A DNA stretch of 64,000 nucleotides. Origin: Phallusia mammillata (Eukaryota). Below, piece by piece: positions 57,207 to 62,950 of this stretch. The position numbers and the translations under genes were made by a program. The stretch spans positions 3,348,001-3,412,000 of the forward strand of contig OZ281494.1 in assembly GCA_965637545.1 (NCBI GenBank), written 5' to 3'. Under the pieces are notes generated by a model. It had not been told where the DNA came from. It searched no databases and saw only the letters and a program-made list of their open reading frames with translations. The stretch's first letter is position 1; the number at the start of each line of letters is the position of its first letter.

Positions 57207-60200
57207 CTAAATCATGTACGGTTCATCCATAGATCGACATATCATCAAAAGGTCATAGGTCATAGATTCCGTCACTCGAGAGTCGCGCGCGTACTCCGTG
57301 TGTGACGTCACAAACGTTCGGATCCATTGTGCTGTGGTGGGGATTTCCCCTTAAAATAAAAACCCACCAGATGTAACTTATACTAAGAATAAAGTTATTG
57401 ATTTTTGTAAACTTTACCAGAAGCTTTTTTGCTGATGAAATCCAAGTATTGTCGAAGCTTGGTTTGAGCGCTCATTTTGATAGATTTGTTTTTTAAGTAT
57501 TCCTCAATAAGAAAAACGAACCCTGGAAACTGACCGACCTAAACAAATCACTAAGATATCAGTAATAATAATGACAATGCTTTTATATGTCAGAATATGT
57601 CAACACTTCGTATACACGGGATTTAATATGTATTCTATTTGAAAAGTAGAGACTGATGATGTCCACATCTCGTTTTGATTGATATATAGAAGCACAGATG
57701 TTTCGACATTAATAAATCCACAGTTTATCAGCGATTTTTGACATAAGAAGCCGACCATTTAAGGCAAAGATCCTGTACAAAATATAACGTAAAGGGACTA
57801 AAGATAATAAACAAAGAAAAACAACGGTAACACGTCTGAGCTCCACAATCCACAAATAATGTTAAAACCAAAATATAATTTTAATTCAACTAAGAAAACC
57901 TCGTAACACTTTAAAACTTTAACTAAAATAAAACATGGGTTAAACTAAGGTTGATTGTGGCAATTGTGAGCAGCATGGTGAATCTAACTACTGCGCTATG
58001 ATGTAAAATGGCAATGTTACACATAAATTAAAATATTTTATCAACAATTTTGAAACGGGGTCGCAGTCTTGGTTTCAACTTTGACCTACTTTTCCATTTA
58101 TGATTTCGTCAACAGTCATTTCCGGAATGGTTTGCTTAGTTTCCTTGATCTTGCAGCTCTCTGAAGTTGAATTGTTGATTAACAAACGAAGAATTAAGGC
58201 AGAAACACATACTGGTTTACCTGTTTTTGAGTTTAAATTGTGTTTGAAATGAAACTTCTGTGTCAATAGAGCGTTGTTTTGTTGAGCTCTTGTCATGTTT
58301 TCATCCAACTACAAAATGAGAATTATGAAAGCACGCTTAAATTTGATAAAATTTGTTAAAACAGTGAAAAAAGAAAAATAACTTTTAAATAACTTTAACT
58401 TTATGAGAAAAATAGCAGATAGTACGCACAATCTCATTCCAAATTAAATTTGAAAGTTATTGGGTGTTCTAGAGCAGTGGTCGGCAACCGCCTGTCCGCG
58501 GCCCGGTACCGGTCTGCGAGAAGTTCGTTACCGGGCCGTATAACTTTTCAGGTTAATTGCTATAAACCATTTTGCCCATGTATCCCGGGGATGATAAACT
58601 AGTTTAAGAGTTTTTATTGCTACATGTTTGTATTTTTTTGAAGACCGGTCCGCGTTTAATTTTCACTTTCAAAAAAAAAAAAATTTTCACGGTCCGCTAT
58701 GCAAAAAAGGTTGCCGATCCCTGTCCTAGAGAATCTAGACCTCCAACTAAATTATTTTAGTTTTGCACTGTGTTGCAGAAAAGGGCTACTTCGGTAAAGT
58801 TGTTTCCATACATTCCTGTATATTTCCAATTTAAATATCACATTTAAAGTGCTACACAGTTTACATGACCTACCTTTGATATGGGAACCAGAATATCGAG
58901 TTTATTTGCCAGAATTACTCTGCTGAGAAGTATGACAAAGACAACAAAAGCTGCATTCTCAAAGTCGCTCAATTGAGCTTCCATTATCCTGAACTCGACT
59001 CTCCATCCAATATCACTGTCTGGAGGAGGGGGCTTGAAACGAACCGTTTGCCAGTTGGTCGACTGAATGTTCTGCAAAAAATCTACGTTTATGCAAATAT
59101 ACAGAATGACCAAACGTAAACTAAACAAGCAGTCTAATCATTTACAAAAATTTTAAGAGAAGGTCTATGTTATAAATAAAATTTGTCAAGAACAATGGAA
59201 GCCATTTTGACTCAAATTGTTTATTTTTTTTGATTAAATAGTTTACTCTTTATTTAGGCCTGAATGGGTTTTGCATTGCATACAGTTTGTTCAGTGACAG
59301 TAGATTTGAATAGTCTTCGTCTTTATCTTGCAATTCCAAACGTCTTTCGATGTTAAATGTTTCATGTATGTTTGATAATTATGAAAAGTGATCAACTGGT
59401 TATGATTACGTTTGAATAAAAAAGAATAACTACAACGTTTGCAACAGTTGTTGTTGTTTCCTCTTTGTTTCAAAAGTATTATTTCCGACAATGTTAGTTC
59501 TGACCAAGCTCCATTTTAAATCAAGTGTCCCAAAAGTGAAGCACACACCTGAAAATGCTCGTAACCAAGTTGAGGAGTGAAAACAGTTTGACTTCGTTCC
59601 AACGAAAGTAGCTTTCTCACCCACAAGTGTGAAAAGTGGCAACTGATTGTCTTTTCCACCCCTGATGTACACAATACAGTATTAAACTATTAATAGAAGA
59701 CCGTTGGATTGCTCACAAAATCAAGAAATTGGCCAATATACACACAGAGTTTCAACGCTTAATGTACAAACAATGAAGTGTAAAATCGCAAAGAAATGGA
59801 TAAACCCAAAAGAGGCAAGTTCAATGACGTCGTTGTTATTTTTATCAGATGTTCACTGGTTTCCAAAATTTGAGCCCGCGAAAGGGTAAGCGCAAGGAGA
59901 CGCCCAGATTTGCTTAGCGCAGCTCGTGTAACCAGCAAATGTTATATTTCAGCAAACAAAAATGCTTGACACAAATTGGAGAAAATGTCGGAAATATAGT
60001 TTTGCTGCAAAAAAGAGTATTGGTAATTGAATGTTAGTATGTTAATCTGAAAATGCATACACGGACACCCTTTTGCACTTCGCAAGAGCCATTTGAAATC
60101 CCAAACCCGTGGTTGAAAACCAATGCCAAGTTCGCTGTGACAAATGAGAGTATTGTTAATAAGCGAAATGTGGTTCGGTATATTATGCTTGCAGGAAAAA

Positions 60201-62950
60201 TACACACAACGACCAAAGCGTTTGCTTTCTACAAGTATGACATTCACACAAACACCAAATCAAACCTGCGTTGTTGAGCATTTCAAACGCGCGTGCATTC
60301 ATTTCCAATGGCACGTCGTTCAGTGTAGGTTCATCATTCGAGAGATAACTTCTAATTGAAGTAACTCTCGGTGTATGGATCCTTGGCACTCTACATGCCA
60401 AGTCAATAACTCTCAAAGCACTTTACTTGGTTAAAATTTGACTCAACTGTTTGTTGACGTTTAGACCTCTTTCTTTATTAGTTCGATCATCTGAACATTC
60501 TGCGAACGCCTGCCATCTAGTGTCAGTATCAACGAGGTATCCACGGTGGATTGGTGACGCAGCAGTGAGTGCGAGCTGTGACGCAAAAACACTAAGCTTA
60601 CATGTTAGGCACATAATGGGACTAAAGTACATGATGTTTAAAGAAAATTTCACAAAACATGAGTTTTGAACAAAACAGCTATGACACTTAAAACAACTAT
60701 GACACTCAGCCATTCTTCATAATCCATTGCTTATGACTAACCATTATAGGACAAAGAACAGCTAGTTGGTCGTACAAATACTTTGCTTCATCAATATCAG
60801 CTGCTTGCAACGTGCATTGAATACAACAGTTGCTTCCGGCAAAAACTGGCGAGTCAAGGTACACGTGATTTGGCCTCGCATCCTGATTGGCCGAAGGGTC
60901 TTTAAAACATTCGAGGAACGGCGATGGCGTGTTCTTGTCCTTGTATACTGCAGTAAAACATTTTTCTAATCCTTTAATTCAGCGGTTTTAAAATACAAGG
61001 GCCATGGCCCAGTGGTGGGATCGTTGTGTATTATATGATAAAATAAGCTCTCATAATCGCACAAATAAAATTTGCAGAATGCTTTAAGTCACAAACCGAT
61101 TTTCACCAACTATTTGGCCCGCCCTATAAACCAAGTTTGGAAGATAAAGTGTATTCATTAAGATTTAAACACTTGTTATACTTGGTATATTTGCCGCGGG
61201 ATTCCTTCCTCGACCTTCCAAAATGCATTGTACAGTTTGTCTTTAAAATAAGAACAAATTATTATATGAAAGTGACAGTCACATGTTGCTAGTTTATGTC
61301 TATTTCTGATCAGAAAACTTAGAAAGAAACTAATTTGTAACCTATAGGTAAGTCAACTGTAATTTAATTGAACTTAAGATAATCATCTTCAAATCTTTTG
61401 GAATTAGTTGTTTCAACAAACCAATATGATGGTACCTGCAACGGACGTCATCTATCACTGCTTCATCTGGAATGAAAAAAGAGTGGTTGATGGGATTCAA
61501 ACCAATATCTTTCATGTTTATTGGAGGATAGATGAAATCTGGACAACCAAGCCTGAAAATAAAAACGTTAAAGGAGAGTTTAGGTTGGTGTGCGGTGGGA
61601 TTCGAACCAGCGACATCGTTCACACTAGGGTTGCGTTTCACCAAATTTCACCAAAGTAGGTGTGCTACGTTGGTCACAAGTCCAAATCCACACAATACTA
61701 CCTCACTTTTCTATTATTTTACCTCGGGAATGTTGTAAGCGTGAGAACCATCTCATCCGGATTCAAGTGTTTTAAAATTTCCTTTCGTCTATTGACAAGT
61801 AAGTGAAAGGTTTCATCAAGGTCTAAAACAGTTTTTCACAACAGAAAAGTTTCTTCACCTTTTAAGCATATTTGCCTCTACATCCAAACAGCTCGTCAGA
61901 ATCCCACTGTATGGCTCACCAGGAGAACTTTCCAACATGTAACCAGCTAACTCGACGCTCCACAAGGCTTCTGGGCTAAAGAAATGAGAAAATAATTTAA
62001 ATTTTATTGTTCTGAGATCACAGTAACTTTGTGAAATTTAGAGTGGTATTTACGGGACAATAATGACAAATTCCGGTTAGAAATTGTTCTATTATGAAAA
62101 CTGCTTGCAGGCAAAAATAATGTGCCCTGTTCAGTAACAAAACAGGAGCATGTGGTATTTCATCGACTTAGTAATATTGACCAGCCATCGTGAAATTAAT
62201 GTAAAAGCATTTTTGCAGCTTACGTTTGAAGACTATTTTCCTGCCCAAGCTTGAGTTGGTTAAAGAGTTCTCTACCTCTCATCGCAAGGCGAACTTTCCT
62301 ATTCTTGTGATCAAACCGAACGATCAGATATTCAATCTGTTTGATATAGTTGCATTTAAGTCATGCCAATAACACAGTGAAGCATGCCGACGTGCACACA
62401 TACAAGATAGTAAATTATTAAACCGACTGGGAGATGGAATCAAAAAGGTGGAAGTGCAGCACTACTTCAATGGTGACGCAATCCCAAATCCTCTACACAT
62501 TCTATGCAACACAATGTTCGAACCAGTGCTTGTTAAGGTAAAGGGTTTCTTAACCAAACAATCAAAGCCAGGACCATCAGATATGATGGCAAAAGTAGGG
62601 TTGCGTAAACCAACCGACGAAAAAATTTCAGTTGCGATGAAAAAGTTTTTTTCTAGTCATGGCAACTGAACACACTTTAGCCTTGCGAATTTCTAACCCC
62701 ATGAAATAGCCCAATGTTCCAATCGAGCGCGCGAGCTTCGTTCTAAGTCACAGGTTTTACATTCATACTTACAAACTTACAACCATTTCTTTGTTACCTC
62801 GTCTCCCCACTTGAGAGGTTCGTTTTTGCGCATTTTATGATCTTTATAAGTTCGAATACAATGGCTGATTCCGTTCATCTTTACGTCATCGGCAAACTGC
62901 TGAATTTCAGACCAAGTAAGAGGCTTCTCTTTAAAAGCTTGGGGCGCCAT
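57207..62950 (-). CDS. GCLC-like: Glutamate-cysteine ligase catalytic subunit-like protein (divergent), 15 exons, about 605 aa
   Basis: Exons: 62798-62950 (ATG), 62224-62336, 61859-61975, 61723-61788, 61436-61552, 61182-61240, 60742-60947, 60448-60575 (donor position least certain), 60266-60390, 59549-59661, 58874-59071, 58221-58308, 58090-58160, 57418-57538, 57207-57349 (TAG). Total 1818 nt in frame. Hallmarks: PLTW, LKWGDEIEY, TTFPRLGCP, KDKNTPSPF, NCCIQ, LYDQL, ALTAASP, DDRT, NIQSTNWQTVRFKPPPPDSDIGWRVEFR, DFENAA, DENM, IINGK, KASG. Confidence 0.92.
58475..58723. mobile_element. hAT-type MITE (249 bp)
   Basis: TIRs cagtggtcggcaacc / ggttgccgatccctg with TSD ttctagag/tcctagag. A right-end fragment of the same family lies at about 50916-50984. 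Confidence 0.88.
61580..61645 (-). mobile_element. tRNA-derived SINE-like fragment in a GCLC-like intron
   Basis: The minus strand reads ...gatgtcgctggttcgaatcccaccgcacacc, containing a B box. I could not fold a complete cloverleaf. Confidence 0.45.

What the first reader, a model, noticed from the sequence alone, without database searches (positions are those of the whole stretch)
57207..62950. GCLC-like enzyme with intact metal/ATP motifs but a rewritten substrate pocket: candidate novel gamma-glutamyl ligase
Seen in sequence: an intact 605-aa, 15-exon ORF that keeps WGDEIEY, both glutamates of E-x6-E (VELAGYMLE), C-x-Q (NCCIQ), the Arg of DTRW, QSTNWQT and WRVEFR. Recalled knowledge: eukaryotic GCLCs conserve PEYGxYM(I/L)E, (HP)RFxTL, YMD(A/S)MGFGMG, SRY(D/S)S and LFIRDP, and in yeast Gsh1 structures the Tyr, Phe and Met residues of these motifs line the amino-acid substrate site. 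Here they read VELAGYMLE, DVRCRQT, YLDSPVFAGS, PRVTS and LWVRKLL. Inference: this is not the housekeeping GCLC but a paralog that ligates glutamate to a different amine or amino acid, or a regulatory pseudo-enzyme. The maintained frame across 15 exons argues against simple decay.
Basis: partly seen in the sequence, partly recalled or inferred. Interest (0 to 1): 0.8.

Follow-up and report, generated by a model that had tools for sequence, protein, structure and literature searches.

The report
Divergent sea-squirt glutathione-enzyme paralog
This sea squirt (Phallusia) genome has a normal glutamate-cysteine ligase gene elsewhere, and the window holds the only unbroken copy of a four-gene cluster of very divergent relatives that keep the ATP and metal chemistry, have lost residues that hold glutamate, and probably make a different, still unknown product.

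Summary

It is not the housekeeping enzyme. A canonical GCLC on contig C7 is 95-100% identical to Phallusia mammillata GCLC.

The window gene (copy C) is one of four divergent copies on C1, arranged as an inverted duplication [A B]...[C D] around four OATP/SLCO transporter genes. Copy A has one nonsense codon. B and D carry several lesions. Only C is intact.

C is at most 48% identical to any protein retrieved. It groups with uncharacterised Ciona "GCLC-like" paralogs (support 100/98). An AU test rejects a Phallusia-only origin (p=0.0017).

The C lineage is under purifying selection (omega 0.11-0.26; p=1e-7 against neutrality).

All Mg/ATP/phosphoryl residues are kept. 41 of 174 positions invariant from sponge to primate are changed. 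These include the Tyr that binds the alpha-carboxylate of glutamate (yeast Tyr362, now Val) and the MGFGMG loop.

Best reading: a maintained ligase with altered substrate use. The function is untested, RNA support is weak, and I could not fold the protein.

The parts
62798..62950 (-). Exon 1 (start ATG at 62950; ends ...KWGDE)
   Evidence: Gene model. Carries the Asp-Glu of WGDEIEY (yeast D49/E50).
62224..62336 (-). Exon 2 (IEYLIVRFDH...)
   Evidence: Carries the Glu52 equivalent.
61859..61975 (-). Exon 3 (WSVELAGYMLES...)
   Evidence: The E-x6-E glutamates (yeast E96/E103) are kept. The Tyr after the first Glu is Leu.
61723..61788 (-). Exon 4
   Evidence: The 70-nt intron 3 lies on its 5' side.
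61436..61552 (-). Exon 5 (ends ...IDDVRC; HPRF replaced by DVRC)
61182..61240 (-). Exon 6 (RQTVQCILEGRGRNPAANIP; the canonical NIRxRRGxK arginines are lost)
60742..60947 (-). Exon 7. Codons 60832-60849 read PVFAGS in place of MGFGMG. NCCIQ is kept.
   Evidence: (PF03074 E=1.1e-11).
60448..60575 (-). Exon 8 (AASPIHRGYLVDTDTRW; the Arg313 equivalent is kept)
   Evidence: Followed by the 57-nt intron 8.
60266..60390 (-). Exon 9. Codon 60363-60365 is Val329, where canonical enzymes have the glutamate-binding Tyr (yeast Tyr362).
59549..59661 (-). Exon 10 (HLWVRKLL in place of HL(W/F)IRDP)
   Evidence: The junction to exon 11 is seen in one spliced RNA-like contig.
58874..59071 (-). Exon 11 (NIQSTNWQTVRFKPPPPDSDIGWRVEFR; Trp445, Lys451, Glu470 and Arg472 equivalents are kept)
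   Evidence: PF03074 E=5.5e-31; alignment to 3ig5_A.
58221..58308 (-). Exon 12 (LDENMTRAQQNN...; copies A and B have a TAA at the first of the two Gln codons)
58090..58160 (-). Exon 13
   Evidence: The 60-nt intron 12 on its 5' side would also stay open if unspliced.
57418..57538 (-). Exon 14 (Thr544 where canonical enzymes have an invariant Cys, probably human Cys553)
57207..57349 (-). Exon 15 and stop codon
   Evidence: PF03074 E=2.6e-11.

Best explanation
The window gene is the single intact member of a four-copy cluster of highly divergent GCLC paralogs in Phallusia (mammillata, or a very close relative). The cluster belongs to an ascidian paralog clade shared with Ciona. It is separate from the canonical glutathione-pathway GCLC, which lies on another chromosome-scale contig.

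Shown:
- The gene is complete and has evolved under purifying selection.
- It keeps every residue known to bind the Mg ions, ADP and the gamma-carboxyl/phosphate.
- Residues that canonical enzymes never vary are replaced. These include the Tyr that hydrogen-bonds the alpha-carboxylate of L-glutamate (now Val), the Met/Gly loop MGFGMG, HPRF, IRDP, and the Cys that is probably human Cys553.

Inferred:
- It is still an ATP-dependent carboxylate-amine ligase that forms an acyl-phosphate.
- Its substrate preference has changed, for the acyl donor end at least and possibly also for the acceptor.
- It probably works without the redox link to the modifier subunit.
- It makes something other than bulk gamma-glutamylcysteine.

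The birth-and-death pattern of the cluster, and its position around four OATP transporter genes, would fit a lineage-specific small-molecule or chemical-defence role. That last step is speculation.
For: - Gene model: 605 aa, 15 exons, all GT-AG. Exons match PF03074 down to E=5.5e-31.
- The genome holds five GCS loci. The C7 locus is 95-100% identical to P0160, Phallusia mammillata GCLC, and carries the canonical motifs.
- C is at most 48% identical to any retrieved protein. No exon-7 relative above 60% identity exists among 1.84 billion representatives.
- Tree: A-D form one clade (100/100) on a stem of 1.05 changes per site, sister to the Ciona paralogs (100/98), inside the tunicates. The AU test rejects a grouping with the Phallusia canonical gene (p=0.0017).
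- Selection: pairwise dN/dS is 0.08-0.59, except one comparison of only 60 codons (B-D, C-terminal part) at 1.16. Changes polarised to the C branch are 21 nonsynonymous against 27 synonymous, omega 0.26 and 0.11, binomial p=1e-7 against neutrality.
- Residues: D49/E50/E52, E96/E103, Q268, R313, W445, K451, E470 and R472 equivalents are all kept. 41 of 174 positions invariant in canonical enzymes are changed.
- Residue roles come from PMC5613772.
- Several of the new residues are identical across the deep type I / type II split within the cluster, where dS is saturated: Cys188, Gly246, Ile251, Leu255, Ala258. That suggests new constraint.
- The Tyr site is also changed in the other ascidian paralogs: Phe or His in Ciona, Phe in one Clavelina paralog.
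Against: - Three of the four cluster copies are broken, so the family is shedding members.
- Low dN/dS is also seen on the branches to broken copies A and B. Part of the signal may therefore predate inactivation or come from gene conversion.
- RNA support is one 123-nt contig at depth 5 in one presumed RNA run. It is spliced exactly at the exon 10/11 junction but has 4 mismatches to copy C. Two other presumed RNA runs laid here show only repeats.
- No close protein is present in the public sets searched, which include P. mammillata entries (the canonical GCLC is one).
- No activity data exist.
- Residue roles rest on one open paper that summarises the yeast structures.
Confidence: 0.55

Rival explanations
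1. It is still a glutamate-cysteine ligase, a second isoform with changed kinetics or regulation. For example it could be independent of the modifier subunit, or insensitive to glutathione feedback, supplying extra thiol in particular cells.
For: All catalytic residues and both documented cysteine contacts (Glu96 and Trp445 equivalents) are kept (roles). The Ciona sister paralogs show only mild changes such as Tyr to Phe. The probable Cys553 equivalent is lost in all ascidian paralogs, which fits altered regulation.
Against: The Tyr is replaced by Val, not by Phe. The MGFGMG, HPRF, IRDP and NIRxRRG invariants are all changed. These positions do not vary in any of 19 canonical enzymes from sponge to primate, so ordinary Glu+Cys chemistry seems to need them.
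Confidence: 0.2
2. It is a non-functional or dying gene. It would be the last copy of a decaying cluster, intact only because it was disabled recently at the regulatory level or is patched by gene conversion.
For: Copies A, B and D carry a nonsense codon, deletions and a repeat insertion. RNA evidence is almost nil. The middle of the gene is homogenised among copies, dS about 0.17.
Against: The C-specific branch shows omega 0.11-0.26 (p=1e-7). The C-terminal quarter of C is unlike any other copy (dS saturated, dN about 0.29), so it cannot be maintained by conversion from them, yet it is open and homologous to GCLC throughout. All 14 introns keep their splice signals.
Confidence: 0.15
3. It is a catalytically silent pseudo-enzyme that binds a partner such as the modifier subunit, or a ligand, for regulation.
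For: Substrate-contact residues are changed while the fold-level similarity is kept.
Against: Every metal, nucleotide and phosphoryl-transfer residue is conserved in all four copies. A pseudo-enzyme has no reason to keep them. The Cys that is probably human Cys553 (a redox-reactive site, HNE-modified; disulfide to the modifier subunit is from memory) is lost.
Confidence: 0.05

Closest known systems
Canonical eukaryotic glutamate-cysteine ligase catalytic subunit (human GCLC, yeast Gsh1 PDB 3IG5/3LVV, Phallusia mammillata A0A6F9DCU9)
   Same: Same Pfam family (PF03074), same length class, and homologous from residue 1 to the C-terminus. At least one intron (intron 8) lies at about the same place in the protein. 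All Mg/ADP/gamma-carboxyl residues are identical (D49, E50, E52, E96, E103, Q268, R313, W445, K451, E470, R472 in yeast numbering).
   Different: Only 44-48% identity. 41 of 174 universally invariant positions are changed: Tyr362 to Val; MGFGMG to PVFAGS; HPRF to DVRC; IRDP to VRKL; three basic residues of NIRxRRGxK; the probable Cys553 equivalent to Thr; and the conserved N-terminal MGLL..G. It is a paralog, and the ortholog of GCLC lies on contig C7.
Ciona 'glutamate--cysteine ligase catalytic subunit-like' paralogs (C. savignyi H2YS62/H2YLE1; C. intestinalis F6ZGZ0 and XP 'like' models)
   Same: Sister clade in the tree (100/98). They share the loss of the Tyr hydroxyl (Phe or His), changes at the same few positions (C numbering 119, 255, 258, 326, 364), and the loss of the probable Cys553 equivalent. 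They too are multi-copy, and I found no paper that characterises them.
   Different: The Ciona proteins keep 149-158 of the 174 invariant positions, including HPRF and IRDP, and MGFGM (or TGFGL in one C. intestinalis paralog). The Phallusia copies keep 133 and sit on a very long stem (1.05 changes per site). The genomic neighbours differ: a P4-ATPase, MFS transporters and amino-acid permeases in Ciona, against OATP genes here.
Bacterial GCS2/YbdK-type carboxylate-amine ligases (from general knowledge, not tested here)
   Same: Members of the wider GCL superfamily that keep the ATP-dependent ligase chemistry, have weak or no physiological Glu-Cys activity, and have an uncertain natural substrate.
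   Different: A different Pfam family (PF04107), bacterial and much shorter. I claim no specific relationship.

Membership tests
Eukaryotic GCLC / Pfam GCS (PF03074) | Significant match to the family profile | tested here: met
   Exons 7, 8, 11 and 15 each exceed the 25-bit cut-off (45-109 bits). The own-genome scan recovers the locus.
Eukaryotic GCLC / Pfam GCS (PF03074) | Mg/ATP/phosphoryl residues (yeast D49, E50, E52, E96, E103, Q268, R313, K451, E470, R472) | tested here: met
   All are identical in the alignment. Numbering was checked against 3ig5_A. Roles come from PMC5613772, except Q268, R313 and E470, which are from memory.
Eukaryotic GCLC / Pfam GCS (PF03074) | Documented cysteine contacts (yeast Glu96, Trp445) | tested here: met
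   VELAGYMLE and STNWQT are kept.
Eukaryotic GCLC / Pfam GCS (PF03074) | Tyr binding the alpha-carboxylate of L-glutamate (yeast Tyr362, SRYDS) | tested here: not met
   Val329 in PRVTS, in all four cluster copies.
Eukaryotic GCLC / Pfam GCS (PF03074) | Invariant MGFGMG loop, HPRF, IRDP, NIRxRRGxK | tested here: not met
   They read PVFAGS, DVRC, VRKL and CILEGRGRN. These positions are invariant in 19 canonical sequences.
Eukaryotic GCLC / Pfam GCS (PF03074) | Orthology to the single housekeeping GCLC | tested here: not met
   The canonical gene is on C7. The window gene falls in a separate paralog clade.
Eukaryotic GCLC / Pfam GCS (PF03074) | Synthesis of gamma-glutamylcysteine from Glu, Cys and ATP | not testable with these tools
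   This needs an enzyme assay or gsh1 complementation.
Ascidian divergent GCLC-like paralog clade (Ciona H2YS62 / F6ZGZ0 type) | Groups with these proteins rather than with the canonical GCLC of its own species | tested here: met
   Support is 100/98. AU p=0.0017 against the alternative. Long-branch attraction cannot be fully excluded.
Ascidian divergent GCLC-like paralog clade (Ciona H2YS62 / F6ZGZ0 type) | Shared derived states (Tyr362 site not Tyr; probable Cys553 site not Cys) | tested here: met
   Val here, against Phe or His in Ciona. Thr here, against Ser or Asn in Ciona.
Ascidian divergent GCLC-like paralog clade (Ciona H2YS62 / F6ZGZ0 type) | Conserved genomic neighbourhood | tested here: not met
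   The Ciona paralog P0163 lies next to a P4-ATPase, MFS transporters and amino-acid permeases. The Phallusia cluster flanks OATP genes.

The most novel reading that the evidence does not exclude
The cluster encodes a new kind of animal amide-bond-forming enzyme, derived from GCLC. It would activate a carboxylate other than free L-glutamate, or join glutamate to a non-cysteine acceptor, to make an ascidian-specific small molecule. The four OATP transporter genes enclosed by the inverted duplication would import or export that molecule, giving a rare animal 'enzyme plus transporter' gene neighbourhood for a lineage-specific metabolite.
Probability: 0.22. Interest if true: 0.75.

Novelty: new variant of a known kind. 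Interest (0 to 1): 0.55.

Why it matters
GCLC is among the most constrained metabolic enzymes in eukaryotes and is usually single-copy. Ascidians are an exception: they have an old, uncharacterised paralog clade, and Phallusia carries its most extreme form. The chemistry-bearing residues are frozen while the residues that recognise glutamate are rewritten.

If the protein is active, it is a natural experiment in re-targeting the GCL active site. It could also reveal an unknown gamma-glutamyl (or related) metabolite in the closest invertebrate relatives of vertebrates.

It also corrects annotation. Genome pipelines would label this gene, and its Ciona relatives, as glutathione-synthesis genes.

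Tried and rejected
- **Only GCLC in the genome:** rejected. There are five loci, and the canonical one is on C7.
- **Recent Phallusia-specific duplicate of the canonical gene:** rejected by the tree and the AU test.
- **Intron 8 is really an in-frame stop (pseudogene):** rejected. The intron, with GT..AG and lengths that are not all multiples of three, is conserved in all four copies, and the canonical gene has an intron at about the same place in the protein.
- **All four cluster copies functional:** rejected. A and B share a TAA. B lacks the second half of exon 7 and exon 10. D has a roughly 1.1-kb repeat insertion in exon 7, a C-terminal deletion and a 3-nt insertion.
- **Which copy produced the spliced RNA contig:** undecided. 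It has 3 mismatches in 93 nt to C plus a Gln-to-Glu codon at the junction. Reference copy A has 6 mismatches, B has 9, and D has an indel. It may be an allele of C from another individual.
- **Conserved synteny with Ciona:** not found.
- **Literature on ascidian GCLC paralogs or vanadocyte GCL:** nothing relevant.
- **The two yeast Gsh1 structure papers:** not held in the library. Residue roles come second-hand from PMC5613772.
- **Structure prediction and pocket mapping of the 605-aa protein:** not done.
- **tRNA scan of the gene region:** no tRNA found, so the tRNA-like stretch in intron 4 is unconfirmed.

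
Full report
**1. The observation**

I translated the minus strand of window 57000-63100 in three frames. I anchored 15 coding blocks and enumerated the frame-preserving GT..AG joins between them.

- One consistent model results: 15 exons, 1818 nt including the stop, 605 aa, no internal stop.
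- The start ATG is at 62950 and the stop codon ends at 57207. All 14 introns are GT-AG, 57-604 nt long.
- Single exons hit Pfam GCS (PF03074) at up to 108.6 bits, E=5.5e-31.

The least secure feature is intron 8. It is 57 nt with a GTTGAG donor, and unspliced it would contain a TAA. The three sister copies have the same intron with GT..AG ends and lengths of 69, 65 and 69 nt. The canonical gene also has an intron at about the same place in the protein. I accept it as real.

**2. Whose genome, and is there another GCLC?**

A scan of the window's own 240-Mb assembly with PF03074 finds five loci.

- One is on contig C7 (about 13,404,754-13,416,114). It translates to exons 95-100% identical to P0160, which UniRef names glutamate-cysteine ligase of Phallusia mammillata.
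- The host is therefore that ascidian or a very close relative.
- This C7 gene carries the canonical strings RYLTQNIRKRRGEKV, HIYMDCMGFGMGNCCLQ, SRYDSIDSYLS and HLWTRDP.

**3. The cluster**

The other four loci lie on C1 within 90 kb.

| Copy | Position on C1 | Strand |
|---|---|---|
| A | 3,331,421-3,337,309 | + |
| B | 3,338,762-3,343,751 | + |
| C (the window gene) | window 57207-62950 | - |
| D | 3,412,389-3,418,747 | - |

Sources.

- DNA comparison shows an inverted segmental duplication. The A region aligns with the D region, and the 5' half of B with C. Both run in reverse orientation through introns and flanks at 79-97% identity.
- Four OATP/SLCO genes lie between B and C, inside the window.

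State of the copies:

- **A** is a complete 15-exon gene whose only lesion is an in-frame TAA in exon 12, at C1:3,336,610-3,336,612.
- **B** has the same TAA. It lacks the second half of exon 7, including NCCIQ, and lacks exon 10. It reads RIMVAQ where C reads RIMEAQ.
- **D** has a roughly 1.1-kb repeat insertion in exon 7, a 3-nt insertion in exon 11, and a deletion of residues about 491-562.
- **C** is the only intact copy.

**4. Mosaic history and selection**

Nei-Gojobori estimates on codon alignments projected onto C show three zones.

- **N-terminal third.** A and D are one type and B and C another. Between the types dS is saturated (above 1.4), dN is about 0.30 and omega is 0.08-0.20.
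- **Middle (residues 278-464).** A, C and D are nearly alike (dS 0.15-0.18). This indicates gene conversion.
- **C-terminal quarter.** A, B and D are alike (dS 0.05-0.15). C is distinct (dS saturated, dN about 0.29).

So two old sub-types existed and were long maintained, and B is a chimera.

I polarised changes to the C branch with outgroup copies.

| Region | Nonsynonymous | Synonymous | Omega | p against neutrality |
|---|---|---|---|---|
| N-terminal part | 17 | 16 | 0.26 | 2e-4 |
| Middle | 4 | 11 | 0.11 | 5e-5 |
| Combined | 21 | 27 | - | 1e-7 |

The caveat is that the branches to A and B show similar omega. Their lesions are therefore recent, or gene conversion blurs the picture. C's unique C-terminal quarter cannot be maintained by conversion, and it is fully open.

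**5. Relatives elsewhere**

- An exhaustive phmmer search with exon 7 against 1.84 billion representatives found nothing above 60% identity. No hit carried the YLDSPVFAGS-type loop.
- The full model is at most 48% identical to anything retrieved, and the best hits are ascidian GCLCs.
- A word search from the nearest full-length hit showed that ascidians hold several GCLC-like proteins per species. These come from Ciona savignyi, C. intestinalis and Clavelina.
- In a maximum-likelihood tree (LG+C20, 32 rows) the tunicates are monophyletic (100/100). Copies A-D form a clade (100/100) on a stem of 1.05 changes per site. That clade is sister to the divergent Ciona paralogs (100/98), apart from the canonical ascidian genes. 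The Clavelina paralogs arose separately.
- Forcing A-D to group with the Phallusia canonical gene costs 23.7 log-likelihood units (AU p=0.0017).
- Long-branch attraction remains a caveat.

**6. What is kept and what is changed**

I took 19 canonical GCLCs, from a sponge and a cnidarian to a primate. 174 alignment positions are invariant across them. C keeps 133 and changes 41. The Ciona and Clavelina paralogs keep 149-158.

The Phallusia canonical protein aligns with yeast Gsh1 (3ig5_A) over residues 1-622 and fixes the numbering.

Kept in C, and in all copies where the segment exists (yeast numbering):

- D49, E50 and E52 (WGDEIEY)
- E96 and E103
- Q268 (NCCIQ)
- R313 (DTRW)
- W445, K451, E470 and R472

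According to PMC5613772 (table 3 and text):

- Glu50, Glu52, Glu96 and Glu103 bind Mg.
- Asp49 and Lys451 contact ADP.
- Glu52, Tyr362 and Arg472 contact L-glutamate.
- Glu96 and Trp445 contact the cysteine moiety.
- In the Leishmania model, Met322 and Gln328 line the glutamate pocket. By counting along the motif, not by an alignment to that enzyme, I place these at the second Met of MGFGMG and the Gln of CCLQ.

The roles of Q268, R313 and E470 are from my memory of the yeast structure papers, which I could not read.

Changed in C:

- Tyr362 to Val329 (also Val in A, B and D; Phe or His in Ciona; Phe in one Clavelina paralog)
- MGFGMG to PVFAGS
- HPRF to DVRC
- IRDP to VRKL
- Arg196, Arg198 and Lys202 of NIRxRRGxK
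- the Tyr after Glu96, to Leu
- the N-terminal MGLL..G
- Cys544-equivalent to Thr

That Cys aligns with residue 554 of a 638-aa primate sequence, so it is probably human Cys553. PMC6875399 describes Cys553 as an HNE-modified site. Its role in the disulfide to GCLM is from my memory only.

Some new residues are identical in both old sub-types, which suggests new constraint: Cys188, Gly246, Ile251, Leu255 and Ala258. Others differ between copies: positions 185/186, 242, 243, 245 and 247. The MGFGMG-equivalent loop is therefore variable within the cluster.

The documented changes thus fall on the glutamate side of the site. The documented cysteine contacts are intact.

**7. Expression**

Only two runs held the stretch (95% of its words). 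Their kind is not on record, and the one I laid covers the introns evenly, so I take it for DNA. None of the runs guessed to be RNA of the species held more than about 1% of the words.

Three such runs were laid on the gene. Apart from a high-copy repeat in intron 11, only one gene-specific piece appeared. It is a 123-nt contig at depth 5.4 in run X3. It joins 59073 to 59552, which is the predicted exon 11/exon 10 junction once the ambiguous bases are accounted for.

The contig differs from C at 3 of 93 bases, plus a change that turns the junction Gln codon into Glu. Reference A differs from C at 6 of the same bases, B at 9, and D has an indel. It is therefore a C-like transcript, possibly an allele from another individual, but I cannot assign it. 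This is weak evidence that a cluster member is transcribed and spliced as modelled. It says little about level or tissue.

**8. Reading**

The gene is real, intact, selectively maintained and not the housekeeping enzyme. All phosphoryl-transfer and metal residues are conserved in four copies across a saturated divergence, which argues for retained catalysis. Residues that no canonical enzyme varies are replaced, including a direct glutamate ligand, which argues for changed substrate handling.

I put 0.55 on 'active ligase with altered specificity'. I put 0.20 on 'still Glu-Cys ligase with altered regulation', 0.15 on 'functionless or dying', and 0.05 on 'pseudo-enzyme'.

The link to the enclosed OATP genes is only positional. 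The Ciona paralog has different neighbours, though also transporters.

**9. Novelty**

Related Ciona proteins are already in databases under 'GCLC-like' names. Four literature searches found no study of them. The Phallusia form is much more derived and has no close match among the public proteins searched. I class it as a new variant of a known kind.

**10. Limits**

- I could not fold the 605-aa protein or map the 41 substitutions in 3D.
- I could not search other ascidian genomes.
- I could not read the primary yeast structure papers.

Noticed in passing
window 3000-55000 (C1:3351002-3398626 and on): Four OATP/SLCO transporter genes lie between GCLC-like copies B and C, three on the minus strand and one on the plus strand. 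The whole unit is enclosed by the inverted duplication of the GCLC-like pairs.
   Followed up: partly
L012/L014 (C1:3330638-3343906) against window 55001-64000 plus L013 (C1:3403001-3419999): This is an inverted (palindromic) segmental duplication. The A region mirrors the D region, and the 5' half of B mirrors C, at 79-97% identity through introns and flanks. The 3' half of B is of the A/D type, so B is a chimera.
   Followed up: yes
C1:3336610-3336612 (copy A) and C1:3343067-3343069 (copy B): The same in-frame TAA sits at the same codon of exon 12 in the tandem neighbours A and B but not in D or C. Gene conversion probably spread it. Copy A has no other lesion.
   Followed up: yes
window 58470-58720 (intron 11): A high-copy repeat with GC-rich inverted ends. 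Summed contig depth is about 180,000, against about 250 for the rest of the gene in the DNA run. It is also present in presumed RNA runs. A similar element seems to be the insertion that breaks exon 7 of copy D (C1:3415372-3416448).
   Followed up: partly
window 61585-61665 (intron 4): A tRNA-like stretch (..GGTGGGATTCGAACC..) that suggests a SINE. ARAGORN finds no tRNA there.
   Followed up: partly
L016 (Ciona intestinalis AP043568.1:4095348-4124718): The Ciona divergent GCLC-like paralog P0163 lies next to a P4-ATPase flippase, two MFS transporter fragments and two amino-acid permease genes. The neighbours are again transporters, but not the same families as in Phallusia.
   Followed up: no
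P0168, P0171 (Clavelina lepadiformis): Clavelina has its own, independently arisen pair of GCLC paralogs. They alter the same two elements: the loop reads STSFGFG or CSCFCFG, and SRYDS reads PRFGS or SRYGP. This hints at repeated evolution toward the same change.
   Followed up: partly
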